The position numbers and the translations under genes are program-made. Below, piece after piece: positions 4,134 through 31,230 of a stretch of DNA of 64,000 bases (position 1 is its first letter; each line of letters opens with the position of its first letter). The stretch is taken from the IMG/VR virus record IMGVR_UViG_3300043399_000877, positions 186,001 to 250,000 of that record. One strand, 5' to 3'. The notes beneath the pieces were generated by a model. It ran no database searches. It saw only the letters and a program-made list of their open reading frames with translations, and was not told the origin of the DNA.

Positions 4134-5225
4134 TTAGTTTAATCCTGCTAGACGTTTGATGTCTATTACATTGGTGTCAGCTGTTGACTTTGTGTTGTTT
4201 TCTCTATTGCCTGTAATTTCTTTGCCTTCAGTTATAATTGCCTTAGTTTGCTTTGCTGGAGATTTACCGTCTATTACTGCCGGTAGGTACTTCTCAAATG
4301 CAGCCTGTAGTCTGTTGGTCTGTACACTTTCCAGTAAGTCTTTCATTATTTCTTTTTGATCCCGACCCAACGGAGCCAAAAGTTCGTTTAATTTCTTTTC
4401 TCTGCTAACTGATTCGACTAAACGCTTGTTTTCGGCGTCCTTTGATTCAGCCAACTGCTTTGCCTTGACGGCAAAAGCCTTTGCTTCTGAAAGTTGACGA
4501 TCTTTTATTTCGATAACTTTCAATAATTTTGATGCTTCACTTTTCTCATTCAAATGACTGCCCATGTATTCAGCAGCAAATGATTCAAATAGTCTACGTC
4601 CAAAATCATTTTTACGTGCTTGGTCGATATCTTCTTTTAGTTGAGAGATTTCTGACTTCAAGCCTTTTTCTACAGTTTCCGCAACTAGTGCAGCACTGCG
4701 TTTGATGAATTGCTCTTTAACACGAGCAACATGTGACTTAGCTTCACGAACAAGTCTTACCTTTGTTTCAGCCAAATCTTTTTTGTCTTCTTGGAACTCT
4801 GCGATTTCTTTTGCAAGTTGCTCTACAATAAAATCTTCAAGCAAGCCAAATTTAGTAGCCATTGCTTTTTGATCTTCATGTAGTTCTGTGATCTCTTTCT
4901 TGAGTGATTCCATCACGAATGACTTCATAAGATTGGAATTTTCTCTCATTGCAATAGCAAATCTTGCTCTTGCTTCTGCGAGACTCTTACGATCTTCATG
5001 GAGTTCAGCAAGTTCGCTAGCCAGTCTTTCTTCAAGCATGGTTGCTACTGATTCTGCCATAACACTCTTGTCGTGTTCGTACTTTTGTGCGAACTCTTCA
5101 CGAAGTTCAGCAGTTGCGGCAAGGCGATTTTCCTTGACCTTGGCTTGCCAAGCTTCTTCGATTTCACTACGCATTTGCTCTGTAATCACATTGTTTTCAA
5201 ATAGTGATTTTAGTGCGTCCAACAT
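4134..5225 (-). CDS. gp22: Prohead core scaffolding protein (gp22-like)
   Basis: Glu/Lys-rich coiled coil with many LxE sites, located between the protease and the major capsid gene as in T4-like phages. Confidence 0.8.
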   Translation of the reverse strand: MLDALKSLFENNVITEQMRSEIEEAWQAKVKENRLAATAELREEFAQKYEHDKSVMAESVATMLEERLASELAELHEDRKSLAEARARFAIAMRENSNLMKSFVMESLKKEITELHEDQKAMATKFGLLEDFIVEQLAKEIAEFQEDKKDLAETKVRLVREAKSHVARVKEQFIKRSAALVAETVEKGLKSEISQLKEDIDQARKNDFGRRLFESFAAEYMGSHLNEKSEASKLLKVIEIKDRQLSEAKAFAVKAKQLAESKDAENKRLVESVSREKKLNELLAPLGRDQKEIMKDLLESVQTNRLQAAFEKYLPAVIDGKSPAKQTKAIITEGKEITGNRENNTKSTADTNVIDIKRLAGLN

Positions 5226-5238
5226 TTCTTTCTCCTCG

Positions 5239-5865
5239 TTATTGGAGACCGCTGATGATTTTCATCAAGCTCTCTTTTAAGTATTTTTGTGCCTTTACGT
5301 CGCCTTGAACTTCTCTCGCAATATTCATTGCTCGATACCCGCCTCTTGAATTCATTAAATGTTCGTATATTGGAGTCGGATAGGCGCCGGGGGCGCTGGG
5401 TTGCGCCACCACGTCAACAGTAATGATTTCAAAATCACTCACATGTCCGTTGCCATCTTCCGAAACGTTACCACTACCCCGAGAGGAAACACCCAGTTTG
5501 ACTCCGCTTTCTAGCATTGTTTTTACCAAGTTCCCCATCGGGGTAGGAAGTATTTTTAACTTACCATAACCGTTTGCGCCATCCATCCACATTTCTGTAA
5601 TCATATGGCTTACACGATCTAAGTTTATGTTGAGACCATCCGGATGATCCACTTCTCCGAGAACACTATAACCACCGGTTATCTGCTCGTTGAGAGAGTT
5701 GACAGCCCTACTGATTTCGCTTACAGGATAAACTCGCTGATTGGCGTTTCGTACTCCACCTTGAATGCAAATACCTTTCATGTAAAGATTTTTGCCTTCG
5801 TCGACAGACTCAATTACCATTCTAGCTTGGTCATAACTGAGATGCTCTCGTAAATAGTTCATCAT
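5239..5865 (-). CDS. gp21: Prohead maturation protease
   Basis: Motifs N.NQRVYP, LGEVDHP, RVSHMIT, GVSSRGSG and DVVAQPSAP.AY. Confidence 0.95.
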   Translation of the reverse strand: MMNYLREHLSYDQARMVIESVDEGKNLYMKGICIQGGVRNANQRVYPVSEISRAVNSLNEQITGGYSVLGEVDHPDGLNINLDRVSHMITEMWMDGANGYGKLKILPTPMGNLVKTMLESGVKLGVSSRGSGNVSEDGNGHVSDFEIITVDVVAQPSAPGAYPTPIYEHLMNSRGGYRAMNIAREVQGDVKAQKYLKESLMKIISGLQ

Positions 5866-5882
5866 CCTGCCTCTTTATCTGC

Positions 5883-6917
5883 TTACTTTGCGCGACTTGA
5901 AAGCTTTGTTAGTGTGCTTACAGCGCCTTTGTCAGCAGTCTCACCTGCGCCTTTTTTCTCAGCGCCGTGGCCCTTTGGTTGTGATTTAAGGTGCTTTACG
6001 CCAGCTTTACCGCCAGGAACGTTTACGTTCTTGGTGTTCATGTCTTTTGCAGTGCCCTTAAACACTCCGTTACCTTGTAGTTGACCTTTGTTGGCTTCAA
6101 CACCCTTTTCAACATCAGTTCTTAGAATGTTTTGAGTAGTTCCGCCCATATCATTCTTTCCTGCAACTGCTGATTTAGTGTTTGCACCGTTGTCGCCCAT
6201 TTTGCCGTACTGATTGTAGTGTGATCCACCAATCTTTTCGACATATTCTCTCATCTCTTCTGCGCTAGACTTTTTTGTCTTTTTGTCGTCCTTCTTAGCG
6301 TCCTTCTTGGCTTCGAAAGCAAATGATTCTTTTTCTTCTTCGCCTTCTTCGTCTTCGCCTTCTTCGTCGCCGAAGTCCATTTCGCCTTCTTCGTCGCCTT
6401 CTTCGTCTTCGCCTTCTTCATCACCACCGAACATGTCGTCGTGCTCTGGTTCGTTTTCTTCACCTGCCATCAAACGATCAAATTCTGCTTTTAGATCTTC
6501 TAGTGCGTCTTCTAGGTCTTGGATTCTTGCATCGGTGTCGCCGCCCATACCGTCGTCATCACCTAGTTCGCCCATGTCGTCGTCGCCCATGCCGTCGTCA
6601 GCAGCAACATCACCCATCATATCATCGGTTGCATCGCCACCCATTGGGGCTTCCATTTCGTACTCATCTTCGAGGCCGAACATTTCTTCGAGTTCGTCGC
6701 CATCGTCTTCTTCAGCTTCATCAACAGCTTCATCATCTTCATCTTCTTCAGCTGCTTCATCAACTTCCTCGTCATCCTCATAATCGCTTTCGAGAATGTC
6801 TTGATAAATCTCACGTGACTTTTCCACGACAATCTCATGGAATAGTTCTTCTGCGCCGGCGCGGTCTTCATTAACCAAGCGCTCTAGCATTTCTTCAAAT
6901 TTACTACGATCAGTCAT
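5883..6917 (-). CDS. Highly acidic prohead core / scaffold-like protein
   Basis: Asp/Glu-rich N-terminal half and Lys/Gly-rich C-terminal half; lies between portal and protease; upstream TAAATA at 6951-6956. Confidence 0.75.
   Translation of the reverse strand: MTDRSKFEEMLERLVNEDRAGAEELFHEIVVEKSREIYQDILESDYEDDEEVDEAAEEDEDDEAVDEAEEDDGDELEEMFGLEDEYEMEAPMGGDATDDMMGDVAADDGMGDDDMGELGDDDGMGGDTDARIQDLEDALEDLKAEFDRLMAGEENEPEHDDMFGGDEEGEDEEGDEEGEMDFGDEEGEDEEGEEEKESFAFEAKKDAKKDDKKTKKSSAEEMREYVEKIGGSHYNQYGKMGDNGANTKSAVAGKNDMGGTTQNILRTDVEKGVEANKGQLQGNGVFKGTAKDMNTKNVNVPGGKAGVKHLKSQPKGHGAEKKGAGETADKGAVSTLTKLSSRAK
6338..6425 (-). repeat. Imperfect coding tandem repeat (DEEGE units)
   Basis: Repeated GAAGAAGGCGA(A/C)GAC encoding DEEGEDEEGDEEGE...DEEGEDEEGEEE. 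Confidence 0.8.
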
Positions 6918-9606: not shown

Positions 9607-12306
9607 TTACACACTCCTAAATAAATCACCACCCATACCGCGCATGCTGTTGAGTGTTTGCTTTTCAATTTCATTAGTTTTTCTTATTTCCGATAATACT
9701 GCTACCATAGTACTATTTAATTGAATTAAGTATTTTATCAGGTTCTCTTGGTCAGTGCTGCTTCGTCCACCAGCAGTCTGTGTTACTGGTTGTGTTTTTG
9801 CTTGCCAGTCATTAGTAAAATATCGATCTAGGAAATCACCAGCTGGGGTATTTCTAGGAACGACTGCTTCGACTCCGTGTAGTGTTGCAACACTTTGATC
9901 TCCGAAATTTTGAAAACCACTAGTACCTTTTGCAAAACCAGACCCCATTGGGTCACCCATGGGAATGTCTGGTGACTCTGGGGTTTCTGTTTGTTCTGCA
10001 CCGGGCATGTATCCGCTTCTAGTCCACCTATTGAACATGCCAGCCAAATCTGCGTCTAAATCATTTTGAATACCCATTAAGTTTGCTGCACCGTATATGG
10101 TGTCACCAAGAAGGTCGGAAGTAAAAAGCAAACTTTCAACAGTGGCATTTGTGGCTTCTAATAATTCTGACGTATCAGCCTCATAACGTTCCTCTGCCAA
10201 AGTTGCTTTTTGTTCCGGTGTTACTGCTAGCCCGGCGTTAATTCTTTTTTCAATAATTGCACCTGCTTCATCACCAAAAAGTGCGCCTGCTGTGTACTTG
10301 TTGATACTTAAAATAAGACTATCAACTAGATTTTCAAAAAATCCAGAAATAGTATTTTTAAGTTCTGTACCATTTGGGCCTTCCCAAAAGTTAATTAATT
10401 GATTTTTTGCGAGATCAAATACGCTCCAAAATCCATCAACAATTGTTTTTAAAAATCCACCGGTTCTCAACTCACTGCCAGCGGCCTTTGCTGCTGCCGC
10501 CAATGCAGGATCCACCGCATTTTCACCATATCCCACATCAGCAACTTCACCATAAAAGAAATCTTTTAAAACTGGACCTATGTAGTTGGTTATTGCATCT
10601 TTAACTAAATTAAAAGTACTTACAAATCCTTCATAAATTACATCAAAGATTGTTTTTTCACCATTAAAAACTTGCTCAAAAGTAGTATAAATGTTTTCAA
10701 AAAGCCCACCAACTCTTTCGGTAGTCCTGCTGTCGGGGTCGCCCCCGGTTGTAACTTTTTTTCCAAAAAAGAAATCAATTAGATTATTTGTAACACGTTT
10801 TACGGTATCGAAAAACGCATCCATATTTTTTTCAAAATCTGGATCGCTTAAAAATTCAGTAAACCAATCTATAGCTTTGGTTACTGTGCCGTCTTTTCCA
10901 AAAAAGTAATTAAACAATCGATCGAGTCCAGATGAAAATCCATCTATACTTCCGTTATCACTTATCAATGTTAGAAGTTTTTCACCGAGTCGTTCGAGAG
11001 AACTAAATGCTTCGCTTTTTATAAATGCCGATATTAATCGTCCGCGAGCACTTTGTACGGTTTGTTCGAAATTACCAAATAGAGTAGTAAGTTTACTTCT
11101 TTGATCGGCTTCGAGTTTGTATTGTTCGGTGTTTATTTCAAGAACTTTGTTAAGTTCAAAAAGACTATCCAACATTGTGGCATACTCGGCAGTTATGCCA
11201 CCAGCTTGTCGCATTGCTGCTATCTGTTCTGTGCTGAATTGTTTCTGTAATCGATCTATCTGAGGTTTAAATTGTTTTAATTGATCTATAAAATCAACTT
11301 CGCTAATTTCACCACGAAACGCACGTTGCATAAGCGGACCTAAACCTTTTATTTGTGTCTGCATCAACACACCTAAGTCAGTTTGTGCAAGTCCGTCCAT
11401 AATATCTTCGAATCCGCTAGCAAGCCCGGGCATGCTGGAACGAACAAATGTCAATACTCCTTCAAGATTCTTTCTGTTTTCACCCTCGAGAGAATTAATC
11501 TGTCGTCGTAGTCCGGCATCTTGCTGCAATTGTGCCATTTCTTGGGCAAGCTGTTCACGTTGTTTTCCTGTGAGTTTTGCCAATTTATCCAATTGCATCA
11601 TGTATTCGCTACTGGATTCCATTAAACTTCGATCACGTAGTTCAATTCGTCTACCGGACATAAGTTGTGCATCCAAGTAAGTTGCAAGACTGCTGTTTAT
11701 TTCGTTAATTGTAAAACCCATGCCCATGAGTTCTTGACCGATCTTACTTGTGCGAAGATTTCTAGAAAAAATACCAAACTGTTTTGCGCCTTCGCTAGTG
11801 GTACCGCCCAGCTTTGCAAATAGTTGAGAATTGTTTCTAACAAGTGATGTAAAATCGTCAAATGCTACTTCACTTTCAGCAGCAGCCAGTCTCATATCAA
11901 AAAGACTGTTGTTAAAACTTGCACCGTACGTACTGAGATCACGGAATGCATCGGTCAACCCTTCGGTATAGCGTATTAGTTCCCCCATAGCCGTACCGGC
12001 ACCCAAAACCATTTCGGCAAAATCGCCCATGCGATCACCGCCGGTAATGAGTTCTTTACCGAAATAACCCAATCCCTTGACGCTGTCGGTTATACCGCTT
12101 ATAAAACCTTTGCGCGCTGCACCTTCATCCCTGATAGTTCGTGTATTGGCTTCTCTAGCTATTCTTTCTAATCGCGAAGCTTGATCTGTACCGTTGCGGC
12201 TGCGGCTAAGGGTGTCAACCAGTGCAGAAAGAGTGGCTTCACTTGCTACGCCAAACTTGCCACCTACATTTTTAATTTCTACTTCGTCAACCATTACCGA
12301 ATCCAA
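9607..12306 (-). CDS. Tape-measure-like protein
   Basis: 899 aa, Ala/Gly-rich helical, LAKLTGKQREQL segment, C-terminal G.F.(A)KGT.GF...G......LHGVEAVVP motif typical of tail-length determinants; sits next to the gp26-like gene. Confidence 0.75.
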   Translation of the reverse strand: MDSVMVDEVEIKNVGGKFGVASEATLSALVDTLSRSRNGTDQASRLERIAREANTRTIRDEGAARKGFISGITDSVKGLGYFGKELITGGDRMGDFAEMVLGAGTAMGELIRYTEGLTDAFRDLSTYGASFNNSLFDMRLAAAESEVAFDDFTSLVRNNSQLFAKLGGTTSEGAKQFGIFSRNLRTSKIGQELMGMGFTINEINSSLATYLDAQLMSGRRIELRDRSLMESSSEYMMQLDKLAKLTGKQREQLAQEMAQLQQDAGLRRQINSLEGENRKNLEGVLTFVRSSMPGLASGFEDIMDGLAQTDLGVLMQTQIKGLGPLMQRAFRGEISEVDFIDQLKQFKPQIDRLQKQFSTEQIAAMRQAGGITAEYATMLDSLFELNKVLEINTEQYKLEADQRSKLTTLFGNFEQTVQSARGRLISAFIKSEAFSSLERLGEKLLTLISDNGSIDGFSSGLDRLFNYFFGKDGTVTKAIDWFTEFLSDPDFEKNMDAFFDTVKRVTNNLIDFFFGKKVTTGGDPDSRTTERVGGLFENIYTTFEQVFNGEKTIFDVIYEGFVSTFNLVKDAITNYIGPVLKDFFYGEVADVGYGENAVDPALAAAAKAAGSELRTGGFLKTIVDGFWSVFDLAKNQLINFWEGPNGTELKNTISGFFENLVDSLILSINKYTAGALFGDEAGAIIEKRINAGLAVTPEQKATLAEERYEADTSELLEATNATVESLLFTSDLLGDTIYGAANLMGIQNDLDADLAGMFNRWTRSGYMPGAEQTETPESPDIPMGDPMGSGFAKGTSGFQNFGDQSVATLHGVEAVVPRNTPAGDFLDRYFTNDWQAKTQPVTQTAGGRSSTDQENLIKYLIQLNSTMVAVLSEIRKTNEIEKQTLNSMRGMGGDLFRSV

Positions 12307-13431: not shown

Positions 13432-14004
13432 TTAGGGATTACCGGTGGGTGGGGCGCCAGTACCACCCAACATGGCCAACAGCGCAGCCTTCTGTTGAGG
13501 GGTCATTCCGGCAACCGCGCTGGCTATATTAGGTGGGACCTGCTGTGTGCGGCGACTTCTAAAATTACCAGCATTTCTAGTTACCGGAGCAGCAAATGCA
13601 CCGCGCTTGACAGTTGTAGCAGCACCAGCAGCACCCTGGGTAGCTTTGAGCACTATCTGATCTATTTCTTTATTGCTCAACGGAGCATTTGCCGGTGTTC
13701 CTGCCGGTCTAACAGTGCGCATTATGTTTCTGACATTGTCACCGTATCCCTTTTGGGTAAGGAATGTGGTCATCTGTTGTGGAGTCAGTGCATTACGTGC
13801 TATACCGGCTCTTCCCATGAACTGACTGAGCTCTGCGCGAACTTTGTTTGCTTCATCACCGGCCTGAAGAGCACCGGTTGCTCTAGCACCTATCTGACCT
13901 GGGACCTTACTAGCAATCTTTTGACCCATTTTTTTGAACATACCCACCGGTGCTTCGGTTATGTCTGTGTCCGTTGATTCACTTAGAACTTCATATACTT
14001 TCAT
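13432..14004 (-). CDS. Hypothetical protein, possibly an internal head protein
   Basis: 190 aa, basic and Ala/Gly-rich. N-terminus MKVYEVLSES...ITEA; GAGG SD; late promoter GATAAATA around 14027-14032. Confidence 0.7.
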   Translation of the reverse strand: MKVYEVLSESTDTDITEAPVGMFKKMGQKIASKVPGQIGARATGALQAGDEANKVRAELSQFMGRAGIARNALTPQQMTTFLTQKGYGDNVRNIMRTVRPAGTPANAPLSNKEIDQIVLKATQGAAGAATTVKRGAFAAPVTRNAGNFRSRRTQQVPPNIASAVAGMTPQQKAALLAMLGGTGAPPTGNP

Positions 14005-14034
14005 GTTTAGATTCCCTCATTTGTTTTATTTATC

Positions 14035-14155
14035 CGGATATTATCAGGATGAGCTTGACGCTCATCCGTTCGTTTGTTCATATATACTCACTGACGTTCG
14101 TATATATTCACAACCTCACTGATGCTTCGCATAGCTAATATCCGATAAATTTATC
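14035..14155. repeat. Nested inverted-repeat (multi-hairpin) cluster
   Basis: CGGATATTA/TAATATCCG outer stem; GGATGAGC/GCTCATCC and ATATATAC/GTATATAT inner hairpins; palindrome GATAAATTTATC at 14144-14155. Confidence 0.8.
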
Positions 14156-14625
14156 AAGATGTCGATAAGATACTACGAGACTCAATGTCGAATGTTTCAT
14201 GTAGATCTAATTCAGTCAGACGGAACCGGTTTACGGTTCCGTCATCTTGAGCTTCATGTGAGTCTCACCCAGCCAAGACATGGAAGCAGGTATTTCTGTT
14301 TATACACCAACTCCAGGGACTCTAACCTTTTCCCTACCTGCGTCGACCCGGCAAATGCGTCATAAACAATGCACTCGATGCGTTGTTTGTGCTGCACTCA
14401 CCGTCCTTGAGCTCGTTCCTCAATCCTCAAGGTGTTTAGGAGTGTGCGGTGTGTTCGAACGACAGCAAGCATCCTACGCCAATACCTAACTCACTTCCAT
14501 TTTTCAGGATACAACGAATTCCTCGAGGGGGAGGGTATCAGAGTGTCACGTGTGCAGCCACGGTTTAACTGCTTTTTCCACAGCGGTATTATCTATCCGG
14601 CCCGCCAACCTTATGTGCTGTTATA
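14154..14625 (-). ncRNA. Candidate large (~470 nt) structured non-coding RNA
   Basis: GC-richer than the flanks, no credible ORF, at least six perfect 6-10 bp stems, including two interleaved 8-bp stems that would form a pseudoknot. Strand is inferred from the upstream operon. Confidence 0.65.
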
Positions 14626-14821
14626 TTGCGCCTTTGGGTAACCAGGTGACCCATTTGCCACCACAGGTTTTGCATATAATTTTGCCTGCATGTGGGCCTG
14701 GTACATCAAGTACAACGTCCCACTCGTGATTTTCGTGCTTGCCTAAGTTTATTTCAGTGTAATCCGGTAGCCTAGTTTGTGGCCTGTATCTTTTTCTAGC
14801 TGTTAGGTCATAATCATCCAT
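14621..14821 (-). CDS. Small zinc-finger-like protein
   Basis: 66 aa with PH.GKII-CKTC-GGKWVTWL (H + CxxC); coupled to the resolvase stop. Confidence 0.7.
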   Translation of the reverse strand: MDDYDLTARKRYRPQTRLPDYTEINLGKHENHEWDVVLDVPGPHAGKIICKTCGGKWVTWLPKGAI

Positions 14822-15338
14822 GATGTATTCCCTTGCAGCTATTCATAAAATTGTCTTTGTTTAATTCAAAAAAATCTTCAAAGCCTGTGATGCGCCAAAA
14901 GTTGCCTTGTTCGTCCTGATAGTCAATATAACGATGATTTTCAAAGCCTGCGGTTAATTTATAAGCTATGTATCTGCCTTTGCGATTGAACTTCATAAAA
15001 ATGATTGAAATGTCGCCTGGATCTGCTGCCTCAAGTGTTTGTTTCATCCATGATTCAAGTAAACCTATTTTGCCTTGTGTTAACAACTGGTGGAAAGGAA
15101 ATTCTGCGTAATTTTTACATTCACAATTGAATTTTTTCCATGAATCCGGTGGTATAACGTCGCCTTTGTATGCCCTAATCTGTCCCTCAGTAAGTGTTTC
15201 TTTTCTAACTGAATTTTTTCCGCCTGTAAATGCGCCTGAATGTGGTACTCTAGTAAAGCTATCATTGTAAAGGTCCGAAAGGTATTTCGCGACTTCCCTT
15301 TCAAATCCTTTACCCTTGGTCTTGCTTTTGCTCGCCAT
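14814..15338 (-). CDS. Holliday-junction resolvase, PD-(D/E)XK type
   Basis: SK.KGKGFEREVA, RVPHSGA, GDVI and ECKNY motifs; next to gp46/gp47. Confidence 0.8.
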   Translation of the reverse strand: MASKSKTKGKGFEREVAKYLSDLYNDSFTRVPHSGAFTGGKNSVRKETLTEGQIRAYKGDVIPPDSWKKFNCECKNYAEFPFHQLLTQGKIGLLESWMKQTLEAADPGDISIIFMKFNRKGRYIAYKLTAGFENHRYIDYQDEQGNFWRITGFEDFFELNKDNFMNSCKGIHHG

Positions 15339-15645
15339 CGTCGCTATCCTTCTTTATAGTAGATAGCGTTTTTATATTTTTCTCCTTGCGAATCTGATAT
15401 TTTTCAGGGTCGAGCTCTTTGAGTTTTGCGTTATGCTGTTTGATTATTTCAGATCTGCGTCGTTGTGCAAGAATTATTATTTCCTGCAACAGTTGTCGTG
15501 TTGACCAACGTGTTCTCCAGCTACAACGCTTTTCAAAATTTTCGTTTTCTTTAAAGTATTTTAAATAGGTTTGAACCAACAAGTCGTGAGTGTCGGTATC
15601 CTCACCCTTGTCAGCCTCAAACCTATTTCTATGCTTTTTTGTCAT
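15310..15645 (-). CDS. Basic helical protein, possibly Hc1 (histone H1-like) DNA-binding
   Basis: Pattern 'Y.K..ENFEK......R..L.EI..LA..RR.EI' resembles Hc1-type proteins; assignment by eye only. Confidence 0.5.
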   Translation of the reverse strand: MTKKHRNRFEADKGEDTDTHDLLVQTYLKYFKENENFEKRCSWRTRWSTRQLLQEIIILAQRRRSEIIKQHNAKLKELDPEKYQIRKEKNIKTLSTIKKDSDDGEQKQDQG

Positions 15646-17420
15646 TCGATTATATCAATATCCGTTTCATACGACGTAAATCCGTTCTCTTTTATAACTT
15701 TTAATACGTTATTAACACGGCCTATGAGTTCATCTTTGTGAGATATTAAGAAAATGTTCTTATCTCGTTCACGTCCCATCTTTTTAAGTATGGCTATCGA
15801 GTTTTCAACACCGGCAGTATCCATACCACTGTCAATAAGTTCATCAATGAACAGTAAGTTAACACCTTCGTACAAACTTTCCCAAACATCTCGGAATGCC
15901 CAGCTAAGTCCCAGTATGAGACGATTGCGTTCACCACGACTTAGGTTGTCAAAGTCCAAATCTTGTCCCAGTTGTGTAATTTCTACATTGAGGTCGTTTT
16001 GGAATACAACTTGATGTGGTAACCCTATGGTTTCCAAGTAATGACTCAATCTAGCATTTAAATAAGCCAAGTTTTGATCAATAATTTTCTTTCTAATAAA
16101 GCTGTCTTTGCTGGTTAACAACTTCAATAAGAATTCTTGATGCTCTTTTAGGGTGTTTAACTCGTTTATAGTTTTCCAATCTACTTCTTGGATAGCGGTG
16201 TTGTTTAAATCATCTATTTGATCTTGGTAAGGATCGGTTTCTTCTTTACGACCTTCCATGGCCCGTATTAAGCCGTCAACGTTGTTACGGTGTTCATATG
16301 CTTCACGAGCAGTTTCGTAAAAAGTAACCGGTTTAGACTCCGCTTCACCCAACTCTGATAAGTTGTTTACGATAATTTCAATCTTAATACCCACTTCACC
16401 AAGATACTTCTCAACATCAGCAAGCTCTTTTTGCTTTTTTTCTAATATTTCAGTCTTCTTGTGATCATGTAGGGCTTGCCCACATGCATAACAAAGTGCG
16501 CTATCTAGTTCACCGATGTCTTTTTGTATTTTCTTAAGAGTTTTATCAGACTGCATGTATGCACTCTCAAGTGCAGCCAGTTCTTTTGTAAAGCTCGAGC
16601 GTTTGTTGTTTATTTCAGTCCAACTTGCAAGCTTTTCATGTTTAGCAAGCTCGGATTCAATATCTAACTTTTCTAACTCAGCAATAGATTCCATAAACCG
16701 TTCAATATCTTGAGATTTCTTAAGATTCCATGCACGTTGCCGTGACTTGAGTGACTCGATGCTTTGTTTGATCTTTTCGTTGCTTGCCTGAACAGCATTT
16801 ATGCGGCTATTCTCTTCTTGAATAGCGTCTTTTGTGAATTTTATTTGTTCTTTTAGTGCTTCGGCCTTTTCGCTCAGTATAGTAATGCCCAACAGTTGCT
16901 CAATAATCTGTCGTTGATCACCACTGCGCATACTCAAGAATGGTTCAGTATAGGTGTTTAGTGCCACAATGTGTTTAAACATATCATGACTCATTCCTAT
17001 AACATCGTTTATGCTTTCTTGAGTTTTTCTACTATCACCCTGACTTTCATCCATGGTTTCGTCTACTTGCTCAGTACCGTTAACGTAATATTTTAAAATG
17101 TTTGGGCTCCTACCGCGTTCTATGCGATAGGAGACACCATTTCGTTCAAAGTTAAGAGTAACCAACATACCTTTACCGTTGGTTTTGTTTATAAGATTAC
17201 CCTTCTTGATATTAGTTAAAGCTTGGCCGTACAGTGCATATGATAATGCGTTGATTATCGTACTCTTGCCTGTACCGTTACGCGAACCAGAATCGTCACC
17301 TCCTTGATCTAAGTTTTCGCCAAGCACCAGGGTAAGTTGTTCCCTGTTAAAGTCGATAGCCTGTGTAACATTTCCGATTGAAAGAAAGTTTTTGGCTGTT
17401 AAATCTTTTAGTTTAATCAT
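15642..17420 (-). CDS. gp46: Recombination endonuclease ATPase subunit (SbcC/Rad50-like)
   Basis: Walker A NGTGKS, coiled coil with CYAC zinc hook, signature LSRGE and Walker B LFIDE. Confidence 0.96.
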   Translation of the reverse strand: MIKLKDLTAKNFLSIGNVTQAIDFNREQLTLVLGENLDQGGDDSGSRNGTGKSTIINALSYALYGQALTNIKKGNLINKTNGKGMLVTLNFERNGVSYRIERGRSPNILKYYVNGTEQVDETMDESQGDSRKTQESINDVIGMSHDMFKHIVALNTYTEPFLSMRSGDQRQIIEQLLGITILSEKAEALKEQIKFTKDAIQEENSRINAVQASNEKIKQSIESLKSRQRAWNLKKSQDIERFMESIAELEKLDIESELAKHEKLASWTEINNKRSSFTKELAALESAYMQSDKTLKKIQKDIGELDSALCYACGQALHDHKKTEILEKKQKELADVEKYLGEVGIKIEIIVNNLSELGEAESKPVTFYETAREAYEHRNNVDGLIRAMEGRKEETDPYQDQIDDLNNTAIQEVDWKTINELNTLKEHQEFLLKLLTSKDSFIRKKIIDQNLAYLNARLSHYLETIGLPHQVVFQNDLNVEITQLGQDLDFDNLSRGERNRLILGLSWAFRDVWESLYEGVNLLFIDELIDSGMDTAGVENSIAILKKMGRERDKNIFLISHKDELIGRVNNVLKVIKENGFTSYETDIDIIE

Positions 17421-17421
17421 A

Positions 17422-18432
17422 TTATAGCTCGTTGTAGATACTTAGTAATACTGACTTGTCGAACGAGTCACTATCGATAGCTGCAATCTCTTTACTCACA
17501 ATTTGATCTATACTCTCAAATTGTGATATATCTAAGTCACTATCAACTACATCTGATCCTTTTTGTGGTATTAGTGTTATTTCACGACAGTTGTATTGTT
17601 GAATAAATGTTTCTTTAATAAAAGTAGCTTCTTCAAAACTGATGTCAATATCCAAGTTAACTCTCAGATACATTTTGCTCTTTATTATGTTTTCAGTGTT
17701 ATCAAGTAACTTGCTGAGAGTGGTTGTACGGTACTTGGGGGCATCTGCCCAGTCTATATACTGCGGTTCAAGCCCATTTTCTCGGTCCAATACCATCATA
17801 CCACGATGATCATCCCATGCGTCAGCATAGTTGTGCGGGAAAGCATTACCGATATAGTGTATTTTACCCTGCACTTGTCTTTTGTGAAAATGCCCACTAA
17901 AAACGTAATTTTGATTAACAAAATCTTCAGATTTTAGTTCACCGGTGTCTGGCATTTGTACCATTGCATTCATGTAGAAGTTTGGTAGCTCAAAATGCCC
18001 AAAAACATACTTGCTTTTCAGTTTGGGTATCTTTTTCCACTCATCACCCACCAACCAAGGAATAAGAGTCACGTCTTCTATTGTGGTTAATTCATTAACC
18101 ACAGTTATTCCCGGTATATGCTTTGCAAATTCTGTGCTTTTTATGTCGCGACGGTCTTTATAATAAAGATCGTGATTTCCTGGAAACATAAAAAACTGAT
18201 CAAATGCCTGTCCGAGTCTTTCTAGACAGCGTATACCGCTGTCCATTGTAGTTAAATTTAAACTATTTCTATTGTGGTTCCAGTCTCCACAAAAAATTCC
18301 AGTTTCACAACCTTCTGACTTGGCTTTTTCTATAAACCAGTCTACAAAATCTTCGCAATCTTGATTGTGAACTCTTGAATTTCCTTTCATACCAAAATGA
18401 ATATCCGTAAAAACGGCTGCTTTTTTAAACAC
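17422..18432 (-). CDS. gp47: Recombination endonuclease nuclease subunit (SbcD/Mre11-like)
   Basis: Metallophosphoesterase motifs TDIHFG, GDW.H, GNHD, GHFE and SGHFH. Confidence 0.96.
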   Translation of the reverse strand: MFKKAAVFTDIHFGMKGNSRVHNQDCEDFVDWFIEKAKSEGCETGIFCGDWNHNRNSLNLTTMDSGIRCLERLGQAFDQFFMFPGNHDLYYKDRRDIKSTEFAKHIPGITVVNELTTIEDVTLIPWLVGDEWKKIPKLKSKYVFGHFELPNFYMNAMVQMPDTGELKSEDFVNQNYVFSGHFHKRQVQGKIHYIGNAFPHNYADAWDDHRGMMVLDRENGLEPQYIDWADAPKYRTTTLSKLLDNTENIIKSKMYLRVNLDIDISFEEATFIKETFIQQYNCREITLIPQKGSDVVDSDLDISQFESIDQIVSKEIAAIDSDSFDKSVLLSIYNEL

Positions 18433-18456: not shown

Positions 18457-18485
18457 AATATAGCAAAATGTTCATAAGATGTCAA
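18457..18485 (-). promoter_or_regulatory. Sigma70-type promoter TTGACA-N17-TATATT (extended -10) for gp47-gp46
   Basis: TTGACA (18485-18480) overlaps the gp55 TGA stop; TGC-TATATT ends at 18457. Confidence 0.8.
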
Positions 18486-19303
18486 CGACTATTATTGTAA
18501 TCTCTCAACATTGCTTCCCATTCACCAGCATGTTGCCGTGTATAACTTGGATCCAAGTCGTTCATCTCAAGTATATCGTCTCGAATATTTTGATTTCTTT
18601 TTTCTAAATTAATGACTTTAATGAAACTGTTGGTAACAACTGCTGTGTAATAAGCAAACGGGTTGTTTGATTTTGATTCATCAAATTTAAGACCGATTTG
18701 GCTCAGTTGTAATATTGCCTGTCCCTTCATCTCATCATTGTAAGTGTATCCACGGACGTTGCCACGGGTTGCGTACCTATCACAAAGCTTCATCCACATA
18801 AGTGCAAGTTTGTTTGTAACCTGTCCATGATCTTTGCTAAAGTGACCGTTTTCCATACCGCCCACCCAGTGGCTCTTGCCAACACACACTAATTCATCAT
18901 TTTCGTTGTATTTCCAATGCTGGAACGGCGGAAAATTAAGTTTTACTTTACGGTCGTCAATACTTTTGGGTGTTTTTTTGCGACCGGGTTCATCTGGGAT
19001 ATGATCAAATGTCATTATTCTAAATATTAAATCAGTTTTTTTAATATCTTTGTAATCAACTTCGCAATCAACCATACGAATCTTTTTATCAGTATATTTT
19101 AACTCTTCGTAAGCTTCTTGTGACAGCTTTTTTGCGCGATTCTTTTTTGCTTCTGCTACAGTTTTTTGATTTATCTTGTCTACATCAGATAAGATAATAT
19201 CGTAATCGCAATACTCTGGTTCAACATAACTACAGTATGTGTTTTTGCTTCGGTGAATTTCCAGTAGCATGTCTTTGTTATTAAGGTAATTTACTTTTTT
19301 CAA
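18482..19303 (-). CDS. gp55: Late-transcription sigma factor
   Basis: NYLNNKD..., RGYTYNDEMKGQAILQL...KFDESKS.NPFAYYT motifs of T4 gp55-like sigmas; TTG start. Confidence 0.9.
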   Translation of the reverse strand: MKKVNYLNNKDMLLEIHRSKNTYCSYVEPEYCDYDIILSDVDKINQKTVAEAKKNRAKKLSQEAYEELKYTDKKIRMVDCEVDYKDIKKTDLIFRIMTFDHIPDEPGRKKTPKSIDDRKVKLNFPPFQHWKYNENDELVCVGKSHWVGGMENGHFSKDHGQVTNKLALMWMKLCDRYATRGNVRGYTYNDEMKGQAILQLSQIGLKFDESKSNNPFAYYTAVVTNSFIKVINLEKRNQNIRDDILEMNDLDPSYTRQHAGEWEAMLRDYNNSR

Positions 19304-30800: not shown

Positions 30801-31230
30801 AAGATACAAAATACTCTTTGGAAATAAAAGTGATCCAAACTTGCAAGCAACATTTAAAGTTATAAAAAATTCAGACCGAGTAGTAAATGATAACGAAATA
30901 AAGTCAAAAATAGTGCAATACATAAATGAGTTCTTTTCGCTAGACAATTGGGATTTTGGTGATACATTCTACTTTAGTGAGCTGTCAGCTTACATAATGA
31001 AGCAAATGAGTCCAGACATAACCAGCATTGTGATTGTCCCCAAGCAAGCGTCACAATCTTTTGGTAGCATGTTTGAATTAAAATGCTCAAGTGACGAAAT
31101 CTTTATAAGCAGCGCAGGTGTTGATGACATTGAAATAATTTCAGGAATCACAGCTGACCGGTTGAGAACAACCGGAAACATAATTACTACAACAGAACCA
31201 ACAAGTGATCTAGGAGGCACAGTTATATAA
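27832..31230 (+). CDS. gp6: Baseplate wedge protein, extended
   Basis: YDFDTLRRTMI.Y....YPE.FND..ESS...ALID..A, NARE.FIE.AERRES and YTQNR..T.EDY motifs. Confidence 0.88.
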   Translation: MSSTDRQNGLLLAEDWKKIYQSFKNAEFKSYDFDTLRRTMIAYIRENYPEDFNDYIESSEYLALIDLIAFLGQNLSFRIDLNARENFIELAERRESILRLARLLAYNPKRNRPANGLLKIEAVSTSENIVDSNGFNVKGRTVLWNDTTNENWYEQFIKIINAALPSSNTFGKPVNSQVVANIPTEQYRFNSTLQTVPVFTFSKTINNLNTVFEIVSTAVSGGVIYEESPVTGQQVSFIYRDNGQGPSSSNTGFFMHFRQGSMQRSDFSIDFPVPNQRVNIDTDNINQSDIWLYRLDNQNSETELWTRVDAVEGNNVIYNSLNKKIRNVYNVLTRENDRVSLIFTDGVFGNLPQGNFRLYYRTSNNRNFAISPNEIRNVSIRIPYISRSGRNEIITLYLDLKTSVNNASASETDAEIKSRAPSTYYTQNRLITGEDYNIGPLGVSQDILKVKSINRTASGISRYYDIVDPTGKYSKTNHFSDDGVIYEEDLENQLEFTFNTFTDVNFVVENTISPLLSDIKVRDFYLKKYPSIDVMTSADIKWNATSNNTNISTGVFENSAKLPYQVGSFTSSILKFIETGAMVKFVPPAGYYFNANSQLVAGTPSKIEDRMYLWTKVVSVSGDGTTVSNSVGPVVLNDEIPTGAVLSKIKQKFSINLSSSIKTRIADQIFSYKIFGLRYDRTTRQWSIITESNLNVKDQFSLLNEGDKTNQKLDSSWVILFSTNGEKYTVTYRGYRYVFESEKQVRFYYDSVTRTFNNRTGRIIKDSIKVLNINSIPNGTTPFTQDYDWEVVSEFTNDLGYINNNKIQISFFDNDSDGIIDDPDLFENIVGTNSLVFFKKSDSDGIENYKYVNQTDENIFVVNSQREINVSLYNSGDIFYIKNTNVFRKLTKNPTRLTMIYDYKARNGRGGLKFQYIHSSDENNRIDPSSTNIIDLYLLTKQYDTQFRQYLNGAVIAKPEAPTPDYLFRTYGNEINKIKSISDEVIYHPVRYKILFGNKSDPNLQATFKVIKNSDRVVNDNEIKSKIVQYINEFFSLDNWDFGDTFYFSELSAYIMKQMSPDITSIVIVPKQASQSFGSMFELKCSSDEIFISSAGVDDIEIISGITADRLRTTGNIITTTEPTSDLGGTVI

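What the first reader, a model, noticed from the sequence alone, without database searches (positions are those of the whole stretch)
14154..14625. Large (~470 nt), probably pseudoknotted RNA at the end of the gp47-gp46-resolvase-zinc-finger operon
This is non-coding, GC-richer DNA with many perfect stems (plus-strand coordinates): 14219-14228/14234-14243 (10 bp), 14286-14292/14335-14341 enclosing GGGA/TCCC, 14405-14411/14426-14432, and 14364-14369/14383-14388. Two 8-bp long-range stems are interleaved (14154-14161 with 14243-14250; 14177-14184 with 14259-14266), which gives a pseudoknot. ACATGAA occurs twice on the minus strand. It starts at the stop of a 66-aa His/CxxC protein that could be its partner. 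It shows no recognisable tRNA, tmRNA, RNase P or group I/II intron core, so it may be an unclassified large ncRNA or ribozyme, or an RNP tied to recombination.
Basis: partly seen in the sequence, partly recalled or inferred. Interest (0 to 1): 0.85.

Follow-up and report, generated by a model that had tools for sequence, protein, structure and literature searches.

The report
New large pseudoknotted phage RNA family
The flagged stretch is a real gene for a roughly 430-base, intricately folded non-coding RNA found in more than 130 uncultured large-phage genomes and matching no catalogued RNA family; it carries two short repeats that always change together, and its function is unknown.

Summary
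Window 14194-14621, read on the minus strand, is a conserved structured RNA about 430 nt long. It is not coding and has no Rfam 15 match. It occurs in at least 133 viral-contig loci (86 distinct full-length copies, mean identity 69%). Almost all lie at the end of the late-sigma/gp47/gp46/small-nuclease gene string.

Covariation is strong. In the 5' domain 97.3% of cells pair, against 80.0% in shuffles, and 16 of 24 pairs show compensatory changes. G-U pairs outnumber A-C mismatches 624 to 76, which fixes the strand. Those stems use unconserved DNA outside the element. The 66-aa zinc-finger protein accompanies only a minority of copies and is not a constant partner.

The two heptamers flank an invariant hairpin. 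They come in 8 sequence versions and are identical to each other in 133 of 133 loci, across at least 11 independent changes. No complementary partner lies inside the RNA.

The best reading is a trans-acting RNA with twin recognition sites for one external nucleic acid. A template-jumping role is the most novel alternative. The function is unproven.

The parts
14194..14621 (-). Whole conserved RNA element, about 430 nt. The 5' end is at 14621 and the 3' end near 14194.
   Evidence: It is 81-84% identical at nucleotide level in relatives whose neighbouring nuclease protein is only 70-85% identical. An nhmmer profile of 86 homologues hits window 14173-14640, E = 3.7e-89. Covariance model R2 hits 14449-14625 (minus) at 125.9 bits.
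14616..14621 (-). 5' strand of pseudoknot PK1 (ACAGCA). It overlaps the TAA stop of the 66-aa ORF.
   Evidence: It pairs with the loop of hairpin 14457-14474. Pair types seen include CG 58/AU 24/GC 3, CG 70/UA 16 and AU 61/GC 24, and 98-100% of cells are canonical.
14581..14606 (-). Hairpin Hb (GGCGGG ... CCGCUG) with a 15-nt loop
   Evidence: It is 99.8% paired, and 3 of its 6 pairs show compensatory changes (helix 2).
14543..14582 (-). Helix Hx (GUG/CAC) enclosing the variable hairpin Hc (14554-14572)
   Evidence: The middle Hx pair is UA 71/AU 15. The Hc pairs are GC 50/CG 32/UA 4 and CG 65/UA 21.
14477..14543 (-). Helix Hd enclosing an expansion segment whose length varies from about 20 to 90 nt among homologues
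   Evidence: Pair types are UA 57/CG 29, AU 52/GC 29 and CG 43/GC 14/UA 13/AU 9.
14457..14474 (-). Hairpin He. Its loop GCUGU (14462-14466) is the 3' strand of PK1.
   Evidence: The stem pairs show up to 5 canonical pair types each and are 97-100% paired.
14405..14432 (-). Hairpin Hf with an invariant loop motif GGAACGA
   Evidence: The stem covaries (CG 41/GC 23/UA 13). GGAACGAG is invariant in alignment A3.
14349..14404 (-). Variable-length hairpin Hg (0 to about 60 nt in homologues)
   Evidence: The base pairs at its foot covary: UA 30/CG 25/AU 17 and GC 30/GU 16/AU 15/CG 12.
14342..14344 (-). 5' strand of pseudoknot PK3 (GAC). It pairs with GUU at 14324-14326 in the loop of hairpin Hi.
   Evidence: All three pairs are 100% canonical with compensatory variants: GAC/GUC, GUG/CAC and GAU/AUC.
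14286..14341 (-). Helix Hh (GCAGGU/ACCUGC) enclosing hairpin Hi (14316-14334, loop AAAGGUUAGAG) and a small variable hairpin
   Evidence: Hh pair 309-361 is UA 71/CG 14. The Hi pairs are UA 61/GC 13/AU 4 and GC 71/AU 15.
14310..14314 (-). 3' strand of a long-range pairing PK5 (GGAGU) with ACUCC at 14439-14443
   Evidence: Alignment columns 209-337 (UA 32/CG 26) and 210-336 (UA 28/AU 27) are among the top mutual-information pairs. This pairing is less certain than PK1 and PK3.
14253..14259 (-). Matched repeat R1 (ACAUGAA), within ACUCACAUGAAG
   Evidence: It is identical to R2 at every variable position in 133 of 133 loci. There are 8 versions and at least 11 independent changes.
14219..14243 (-). 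Near-invariant hairpin Hj (GACGGAACC ... GGUUCCGUC) between the two repeats
   Evidence: GGTTCCGTCTGAC is invariant in alignments A3 and A5. Note that the search pattern required this 13-mer.
14196..14202 (-). Matched repeat R2 (ACAUGAA), within AUCUACAUGAAA. It lies 57 nt downstream of R1.
   Evidence: The evidence is the same as for R1. Mean predicted unpaired probability is 0.58 (R1) and 0.61 (R2), against 0.45 for the whole RNA.
14621..14821 (-). 66-aa His/CxxC ORF directly upstream. It is not a constant companion of the RNA.
   Evidence: Homologues occur in 8 of 109 loci with enough flank. It has no Pfam or PHROG family and no match in GenBank phages.
14814..15338 (-). PDDEXK_15 nuclease, annotated as a RusA-like resolvase. 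In most relatives a SegE-type GIY-YIG nuclease occupies this position.
   Evidence: Pfam PF24608, E = 3.8e-27. Among homologous loci, 93 of 109 have a GIY-YIG gene upstream and 8 have a PDDEXK gene.

Best explanation
Window 14194-14621 encodes, on the minus strand, an autonomously folding RNA of about 430 nt.

Shown:
- It is the last conserved element of the late-sigma (gp55-like), gp47, gp46, small protein, small nuclease gene string.
- It starts at the stop codon of whichever ORF lies upstream.
- It folds into about ten helices tied together by at least three pseudoknots.
- It has peripheral hairpins of variable length and near-invariant loops and junctions.

Inferred:
- No promoter or terminator of its own was seen, so it is probably made by read-through of the operon transcript and then persists as a stable trans-acting RNA.
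- Its working end is the 3' module: two single-stranded heptamers of the form ACA-N-N-A-N, 49-67 nt apart on either side of an invariant GC-rich hairpin.
- The two heptamers are kept identical to each other while their sequence drifts, and no complementary segment exists inside the RNA. The simplest mechanism is that both base-pair with the same external nucleic-acid sequence. That could be two copies of it or one copy bound alternately. The pseudoknotted body would act as a scaffold that presents the two sites at a fixed geometry.

The partner is unknown. A tRNA anticodon loop is one concrete candidate. Read as A-N-N plus an invariant A, the versions are AUG, AUA, AGA, AGG and AUC.
For: Reality and strand of the RNA:
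- There are at least 133 loci in viral contigs.
- The 86 unique full-length copies average 69% identity.
- In the 5' domain 97.3% of cells pair versus 80.0% in shuffles, and the covariation score is 0.514 versus 0.197 (0 of 500 shuffles reach it). Slid controls give 0.047-0.098. 16 of 24 pairs change on both sides.
- 20 of the 45 strongest mutual-information column pairs are at least 90% Watson-Crick or G-U.
- There are 624 G-U cells against 76 A-C cells.
- There is no conserved reading frame on either strand.

Position in the genome:
- The RNA lies on the same strand as, and downstream of, gp46 in 98 loci and the small protein p111 in 83. It lies upstream of the opposite-strand baseplate hub gene in 82.
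- No consensus promoter or terminator flanks it in the window on the minus strand.

Twin sites:
- The 8 versions are identical in both copies in 133 of 133 loci.
- At least 11 independent changes occur on a tree built without those columns.
- Each variable column shares all of its information only with its twin.
- No complementary 6-7-mer sits at a fixed position within -750 to +500 nt or in the 5-10 kb of flank held.
- The repeats are predicted to be more single-stranded than the rest of the RNA.
Against: - No transcript data exist for any member, so transcription, the RNA ends and stability are all inferred.
- No partner sequence was found. Only 5-10 kb around each copy could be searched, so a partner elsewhere in these genomes of 100-380 kb is untested.
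- Secondary-structure prediction puts the repeats only modestly above average in accessibility (0.58 and 0.61 versus 0.45).
- A protein dimer that reads both sites, or strand transfer between the repeats, would also demand identity.
- The collection scan required GGTTCCGTCTGAC and ATCTACA, so invariance of those bases is partly built in by the search. The variable positions that follow them are not affected.
Confidence: 0.5

Rival explanations
1. Template RNA with programmed strand transfer. A polymerase copies the roughly 57-nt hairpin unit from R2 towards R1. The nascent strand's end, complementary to R1, re-anneals at the identical R2 and synthesis continues, giving tandem-repeat product. 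This is the logic of DRT2 ACA-1/ACA-2 (matched motifs in a defence-system RNA), of retroviral R repeats and of telomerase template alignment regions.
For: - Identity of two direct repeats, rather than any particular sequence, is exactly what strand transfer requires. It is seen in 133 of 133 loci over at least 11 changes.
- Both repeats contain an invariant ACA and flank a segment bounded by a strong stem. In the DRT2 ncRNA, disrupting the homology between ACA-1 and ACA-2 abolishes function (bioRxiv 10.1101/2024.05.08.593200, read).
- The body of the RNA is pseudoknotted like known reverse-transcriptase scaffolds.
Against: - No reverse transcriptase or other dedicated polymerase is among the constant neighbours, which are gp46, p111 and a nuclease.
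- None was listed among the 25 most-matched PHROG families (of 34) returned for the window's 35 other large ORFs.
- The repeat spacing varies from 49 to 67 nt and is not held to multiples of three, so the product would not be a repeat-encoded ORF.
- An invariant 9-bp GC-rich hairpin is a poor template.
Confidence: 0.12
2. Cis-acting 3'-UTR element. The fold stabilises or processes the upstream operon mRNA, or controls read-through into the downstream gene, and has no trans function.
For: - It always abuts the stop codon of the upstream ORF on the same strand and shows no promoter of its own.
- A same-strand ORF follows it in many loci.
Against: - About 430 nt with three pseudoknots and invariant loops is far more than mRNA 3' protection needs.
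- The downstream gene differs among loci. A p190-like ORF follows in only 22, and the spacing ranges from 11 to 356 nt.
- The same 3' core occurs in unrelated neighbourhoods next to ClpP or SHMT genes.
- This reading does not explain why the matched repeats must stay identical.
Confidence: 0.15
3. RNA subunit or guide of the neighbouring small nuclease (GIY-YIG, or PDDEXK plus the zinc-finger protein).
For: - A nuclease gene lies within 900 nt in 102 of 109 loci.
- In L036 and L096 the gene order is reversed (RNA, then GIY-YIG) in a different neighbourhood.
Against: - A 67%-identical GIY-YIG homologue in cultured phage Melnitz sits beside ribonucleotide reductase genes with no copy of the RNA.
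- Relatives of this nuclease are scattered through T4-like phages, where records annotate them as homing endonucleases.
- Seven loci, including L109 and L115, have the RNA without a nuclease.
- Two unrelated nuclease folds occupy the same slot.
- A freestanding homing endonuclease that lands beside a highly conserved RNA gene would explain the linkage without any functional tie.
Confidence: 0.1
4. Self-splicing or otherwise mobile intron-like ribozyme, of the group I type, that carries a GIY-YIG homing endonuclease gene.
For: - Its size, pseudoknots and phage setting fit.
- So does the GIY-YIG ORF placed sometimes 5' and sometimes 3' of the fold.
Against: - It has no match to Rfam group I or group II models even at E <= 10.
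- The upstream flank is the complete 3' end of at least three unrelated ORF families, and the downstream flank is unconserved. No split host gene exists.
- The 5'-most bases are occupied by the covarying pseudoknot PK1, not by an exon-binding guide.
Confidence: 0.04
5. A DNA-level element such as a replication origin or packaging site, or a decayed or unusual coding region, and not an RNA.
For: - Both strands fold better than shuffles.
- Antisense stop-free stretches reach 144 codons in some homologues.
Against: - Compensatory changes preserve pairing, and G-U pairs outnumber A-C by 624 to 76. This asymmetry is expected for RNA of one strand and not for duplex DNA.
- The antisense open stretches lie in different frames in different members.
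- Insertions and deletions fall in hairpin tips.
Confidence: 0.03

Closest known systems
GOLLD and ROOL (large ornate RNAs of unknown function, often phage- or prophage-borne)
   Same: Both are large, GC-enriched relative to the genome, multi-pseudoknotted and carried by phages. Both have variable peripheral hairpins around a conserved core and no obligatory protein partner. Both are known only from comparative genomics.
   Different: There is no sequence or structure match to the Rfam models. This RNA is about 430 nt, against roughly 580-800 nt for those (from my own knowledge). No tRNA genes lie nearby. Its carriers are uncultured aquatic T4-like or jumbo phages related to PA5oct. It also carries the matched-repeat module.
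DRT2 non-coding RNA (ACA-1/ACA-2 template-jump motifs); by the same logic, retroviral R repeats and the telomerase RNA template
   Same: Both are pseudoknotted ncRNAs with two short identical direct repeats. Both repeats contain ACA and border a defined segment next to a stem, and their mutual identity is what matters (for DRT2; here).
   Different: No reverse transcriptase is adjacent. This RNA is phage-encoded and not a bacterial defence locus. The unit is 49-67 nt and not frame-preserving. No product has been observed.
T-box leader specifier loop
   Same: A single-stranded, codon-like triplet is followed by an invariant purine. The triplets here are AUG, AUA, AGA, AGG and AUC, followed by A. 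The T-box features are from my own knowledge.
   Different: There are two copies instead of one. It is not the 5' leader of an aminoacyl-tRNA synthetase or amino-acid gene. There is no Rfam T-box hit, and no tRNA link has been shown.
Phage group I introns with GIY-YIG homing endonucleases (for example T4 td with I-TevI)
   Same: Both are phage RNAs of several hundred nucleotides with pseudoknots that sit next to a GIY-YIG gene.
   Different: There is no interrupted host gene, no Rfam match and no conserved exon flanks.
HEARO / IscB omega-RNA and TnpB guide RNAs
   Same: Both are large structured RNAs found directly beside a small nuclease gene.
   Different: The neighbouring nuclease here is GIY-YIG or PDDEXK, not IscB or TnpB. 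There is no Rfam HEARO hit. The nuclease family also occurs without the RNA.

Membership tests
[quoted passage not shown] | A covariance-model match at or near the family's gathering score | tested here: not met
   There are 0 matches at gathering score in the whole window. Over 13900-14900 at E <= 10 there are only two chance-level hits, to eukaryotic families at 15.4 and 11.4 bits.
tRNA / tmRNA | A cloverleaf or tRNA-like domain recognised by ARAGORN | tested here: not met
   ARAGORN finds no genes in the window or in 60 homologous loci.
Group I intron | It interrupts a host gene whose exons are conserved and join into one reading frame or RNA | tested here: not met
   The upstream flank is the intact end of a GIY-YIG, PDDEXK or p66-like ORF. 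The downstream flank is unconserved and followed by differing ORFs.
Group I intron | A P3-P7 pseudoknot core with a guanosine-binding site and a P1 internal guide | tested here: inconclusive
   Pseudoknots exist, but PK1 pairs the 5' end with a hairpin loop, not with an exon. No tool here tests for a G-binding site.
GOLLD / ROOL | Frequent adjacency to tRNA genes in phage or prophage DNA (from my own knowledge) | tested here: not met
   No tRNA lies within the 5-10 kb held for 60 loci.
DRT2-type template ncRNA | Two identical short direct repeats bordering the template segment | tested here: met
   R1 and R2 are identical in 133 of 133 loci across 8 versions and at least 11 changes.
DRT2-type template ncRNA | An adjacent reverse transcriptase gene that binds the RNA | tested here: not met
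   The constant neighbours are gp46, p111, a GIY-YIG or PDDEXK nuclease and the baseplate hub. The rest of each genome was not searched.
DRT2-type template ncRNA | A concatemeric cDNA product | not testable with these tools
   This needs sequencing of nucleic acids from infected cells.
Nuclease guide RNA (HEARO/omega-RNA type) | Obligate co-occurrence of the RNA with its nuclease | tested here: not met
   Melnitz has a 67%-identical GIY-YIG gene without the RNA. Seven loci have the RNA without a nuclease within 900 nt.
T-box riboswitch | A 5' leader of an amino-acid-related gene with a T-box sequence and a terminator/antiterminator switch | tested here: not met
   The element lies at the 3' end of an operon. 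It has no Rfam T-box hit and no terminator on its strand.

The most novel reading that the evidence does not exclude
The RNA may be a phage-encoded template or guide module of a new kind. Its two obligatorily identical heptamers would program strand transfer, giving tandem-repeat synthesis of a roughly 57-nt hairpin unit. Alternatively they would clamp two copies of one target such as a tRNA anticodon loop. Either way the ornate pseudoknotted body would be the catalytic or scaffolding part, making this a new functional class of large RNA in uncultured jumbo and T4-like phages.
Probability: 0.15. Interest if true: 0.95.

Novelty: categorically new. Interest (0 to 1): 0.82.

Why it matters
Large RNAs with many pseudoknots and invariant junctions are rare. 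Of the bacterial and phage examples that have been characterised, most turned out to be ribozymes or to have exceptional biology: RNase P, group I and II introns, tmRNA, HEARO (the IscB guide RNA), and ROOL and GOLLD (RNA cages).

This family is abundant in aquatic viral metagenomes, well over 100 contigs in one collection, and absent from Rfam 15. It offers a clean, testable puzzle: two short sites that must stay identical through at least 11 sequence switches. That constraint narrows the mechanism to base-pairing with a shared partner or to strand transfer, and it can be attacked directly by genome-wide co-variation searches and by mutagenesis.

It also gives a marker RNA for a large clade of uncultured PA5oct-related phages.

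Tried and rejected
- **Coding or pseudogene reading.** Six-frame translation shows stops in every frame. Long antisense stop-free runs in homologues are in inconsistent frames.
- **Known RNA families.** Rfam was searched at gathering score and at E <= 10, and ARAGORN was run. Nothing was found.
- **Cultured-phage homologues.** blastn of two family members against 50,697 GenBank phage records gave no match.
- **Distant relatives.** Sequence profiles and covariance model R1 found nothing in PA5oct, Phosso, Atu_ph07, Melnitz or the L008-L017 clade. A shared GAGTCCCTGG..TTGGTGT string in PA5oct stayed an unconfirmed lead.
- **PA5oct transcriptome paper.** Its four ncRNAs lie elsewhere in the genome (PMC7318152).
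- **Literature.** Searches for a described family found none. The viral structured-RNA catalogue of Fremin et al. 2023 (PMC10690425) could contain fragments of it, but its tables were not checked.
- **p66 as partner.** Rejected on distribution.
- **Internal partner for the repeats.** Mutual information and wobble-tolerant complement scans found none.
- **Palindrome self-pairing of the repeats.** By inspection it fails for the UA, GG, GA and UC versions.
- **Translational bypass or a small ORF starting at the repeat AUG.** Rejected because 25 loci lack AUG and the upstream ORF ends at the RNA's 5' end, roughly 370 nt before R1.
- **Host inference from MAGs.** Six pattern hits fell in taxonomically scattered bins. 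Only three carry the RNA, probably on mis-binned phage contigs.
- **Technical limits.** A covariance model of the full-length RNA could not be built (400-column limit and calibration time). RNAalifold on the 3' domain recovered only 13 pairs, so the 3'-domain helices rest on my own pair counts.
Full report
**What is at the coordinates**

The window comes from IMGVR_UViG_3300043399_000877, a 382-kb viral contig. Its recombination genes are about 69% identical at nucleotide level to those of Pseudomonas jumbo phage PA5oct, and its gp46 protein is 50% identical.

On the minus strand the gene order is:
- a gp55-like late sigma factor (18482-19303);
- an SbcD/gp47-like nuclease (17422-18432);
- SbcC/gp46 (15642-17420);
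- a 111-aa basic protein, called p111 below;
- a PDDEXK_15 nuclease annotated as a RusA-like resolvase (14814-15338);
- a 66-aa His/CxxC ORF, called p66 below (14621-14821);
- 616 nt without an ORF;
- a GC-rich 190-aa ORF, called p190 below (13432-14004);
- an opposite-strand baseplate hub gene.

The ORF-free stretch has stops in all six frames. Its GC is 0.49-0.51, against 0.35-0.39 in the neighbouring genes. It folds 4.7-5.0 standard deviations better than dinucleotide shuffles on either strand.

**Known families**

Rfam 15 gives no match at gathering score anywhere in the window. At E <= 10 over 13900-14900 it gives only two chance-level hits to eukaryotic families. ARAGORN finds no tRNA or tmRNA.

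**Homologues**

Scanning IMG/VR with the neighbouring nuclease brought in 15 related loci. In the two closest groups the non-coding stretch is 81-84% identical in DNA, while the nuclease protein is only 85% and 70% identical. In the second group the element sits directly after the nuclease and there is no p66 ORF.

Two independent DNA patterns taken from invariant blocks then retrieved more loci:
- GGTAGGGAAAA..GAGTCCCTGG gave 17 stretches;

A profile search shows that about 80 of the latter carry the whole 400-450-nt element. The rest are cut by contig ends or carry only the 3' part. Together there are 86 distinct full-length copies with mean pairwise identity 69% and minimum 54%. The conserved element maps to window 14194-14621.

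**It is an RNA of the minus strand**

A covariance model of the 5' domain was aligned to 83 loci. The results:
- 97.3% of pair cells are canonical, against 80.0% after shuffling (0 of 500 shuffles reach it);
- the covariation score is 0.514, against 0.197 for shuffles and 0.047-0.098 when partners are slid by 1-3 columns;
- 16 of 24 pairs carry changes on both sides.

On the 86-sequence alignment, 20 of the 45 strongest mutual-information column pairs are at least 90% Watson-Crick or G-U and stack into helices. Across the helices there are 624 G-U cells and 76 A-C cells. On the opposite strand every G-U would be an A-C mismatch, so the RNA is read from the window's minus strand, the strand of the operon.

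Long stop-free antisense runs seen in some members lie in different frames in different members, which is a composition effect.

**Architecture** (minus-strand order; window coordinates are in the parts section)

- **PK1.** The first five or six bases (ACAGC here; CCAAC, CUAAC, GCAAC, CCGAC or AUAGC elsewhere) pair with the loop of a hairpin 150 nt downstream (GCUGU, GUUGG, GUUAG, GUUGC, GUCGG or GCUAU). Four of its six pairs covary.
- **5' domain.** After PK1 come hairpin Hb, helix Hx (GUG/CAC, becoming GAG/CUC in 15 sequences) around hairpin Hc, helix Hd around an expansion segment of about 20-90 nt, and hairpin He, whose loop forms PK1.
- **Middle.** An A-rich linker leads to hairpin Hf with the invariant loop GGAACGA, then to hairpin Hg of 0-60 nt.
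- **PK3.** A GAC triplet pairs with GUC in the 11-nt loop AAAGGUCAGAG of hairpin Hi. The compensatory variants are GUG/CAC and GAU/AUC, and all cells are canonical.
- **Hh and PK5.** Helix Hh encloses Hi. A further long-range pairing, PK5 (ACUCC/GGAGU in the window), is less certain.
- **3' module.** It consists of repeat R1, the near-invariant hairpin GACGGAACC/GGUUCCGUC, UGAC, and repeat R2.

Sixteen loci keep the 3' 250-nt core but carry a different 5' domain of about 130 nt. The core is therefore Hf through R2.

That stretch is outside the element and not conserved even in the nearest relatives.

**Genomic setting**

The RNA lies downstream of, and co-oriented with, gp46 in 98 loci, p111 in 83 and the sigma factor in 63. 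It lies upstream of the opposite-strand baseplate hub in 82.

The ORF that ends at its 5' edge is a SegE-type GIY-YIG protein of about 145 aa in 57 of 74 distinct cases and a PDDEXK_15 protein in 2. In the remainder it is a small ORF, some of them p66-like. Counting anything within 900 nt upstream, among the 109 loci with enough flank:
- 93 have a GIY-YIG gene;
- 8 have a PDDEXK gene;
- 8 have a p66-like ORF in between;
- 7 have no nuclease.

In L036 and L096 the GIY-YIG gene follows the RNA, and no gp46-operon gene was detected nearby by BLAST. L109 and L115 carry the alternative-5'-domain form next to ClpP or SHMT/aldolase genes, with no nuclease.

A 67%-identical GIY-YIG homologue in cultured Methylophilales phage Melnitz sits beside ribonucleotide reductase genes with no copy of the RNA. 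Relatives are scattered through T4-like cyano- and rhizobiophages, where several records annotate them as homing endonucleases.

The linkage is therefore as well explained by synteny, or by a freestanding homing endonuclease landing beside a very conserved gene, as by a functional partnership. No minus-strand promoter-like or terminator-like site brackets the element in the window.

**The matched repeats**

R1 (ACUCACA-NNAN) and R2 (AUCUACA-NNAN) lie 49-67 nt apart. The four positions after ACA occur as UGAA (94 loci), UGAU (12), UAAU (9), GAAA (6), UAAA (5), GGAA (3), UGAG (2) and UCAA (2). The two copies are identical in all 133 loci.

- On a maximum-likelihood tree built without those columns, the version changes at least 11 times.
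- Each variable column shares its full entropy only with its twin. No third column comes close.
- No complementary 6- or 7-mer, with G-U allowed, recurs at a fixed place from -750 to +500 nt or in the flanks held.
- Predicted accessibility is somewhat above average: 0.58 and 0.61, against 0.45.

What is selected is identity between the two sites, not a particular sequence. A fixed-specificity protein or nuclease would not demand this. Base-pairing of both sites with one co-varying external sequence would, and so would transfer of a nascent complementary strand from one repeat to the other. The second logic is established for DRT2 ncRNA, where homology between ACA-1 and ACA-2 is required for template jumping (10.1101/2024.05.08.593200).

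Read as A-N-N plus an invariant A, the versions are AUG, AUA, AGA, AGG and AUC. This resembles a T-box specifier facing a tRNA anticodon and U33. That is a lead from my own knowledge, not a test.

**Verdict**

The finding is real and its central interpretation is right. The partner protein and the specific pseudoknot proposed are not supported.

The family matches nothing in Rfam 15 or in 50,697 GenBank phage records, and I found no description of it in the literature searched. A catalogue of 10,006 viral structured-RNA candidates (PMC10690425) might include pieces of it; that was not checked.

My best mechanistic reading is a stable trans-acting scaffold that presents twin recognition sites for one external nucleic acid (confidence about 0.5 for the package, far lower for any named partner). 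The rivals are a template-jump RNA (0.12), a cis-acting 3'-UTR element (0.15), a nuclease cofactor (0.10) and an intron-like element (0.04). No transcript evidence exists and no member is in a cultured phage. Both points limit certainty about everything beyond structure and conservation.

Noticed in passing
L009:6545-6910 and the equivalent places in L010-L017 (alignment A7 columns about 66-430): This sister clade lacks the RNA. At the same syntenic spot it has a different ORF-free block of about 360 nt with 91% mean column identity among five loci. The block opens with three direct CTAACACA repeats. It may be an analogous RNA.
   Followed up: partly
L001 (PA5oct NC_071039.1) locus 5211-6720, record about 75.7-77.2 kb: This is 1.5 kb at the syntenic position with only four annotated ORFs of 38-50 aa. 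It shares just a GAGTCCCTGG..TTGGTGT string with the window's RNA. It is not among the four ncRNAs reported for PA5oct.
   Followed up: partly
L041, L047, L084, L073, L128, L065, L069, L112, L140, L142, L055, L132, L043, L146, L109, L115: A second architectural type of the RNA keeps the 3' 250-nt core, but a different conserved 5' domain of about 130 nt replaces the PK1-containing domain. L109 and L115 sit among ClpP, SHMT, aldolase and Bax1-I genes.
   Followed up: partly
L036:2222-2644 and L096:5700-6161: A SegE-type GIY-YIG gene lies immediately downstream of the RNA, not upstream. No gp46-operon gene was detected nearby by BLAST.
   Followed up: partly
window 13432-14004 (minus): A 190-aa Ala/Gly/Thr-rich ORF has GC up to 0.55 in a genome of about 38% GC. 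It has no Pfam or PHROG family and no match in GenBank phages. Weak homologues follow the RNA in 22 loci.
   Followed up: partly
window 31230-44798 (plus): A single 4522-aa ORF lies within the virion-structural gene block.
   Followed up: no
L151 (Sinorhizobium phage Phosso) locus 10410-11425: About 1 kb beside the annotated Holliday junction resolvase carries no annotation. The 3'-domain model does not hit it.
   Followed up: partly
L153, L154, L155 (MAG contigs): These contigs contain the 20-base search pattern but give no match to the 3'-domain model. They are either chance hits or very divergent or partial copies.
   Followed up: no
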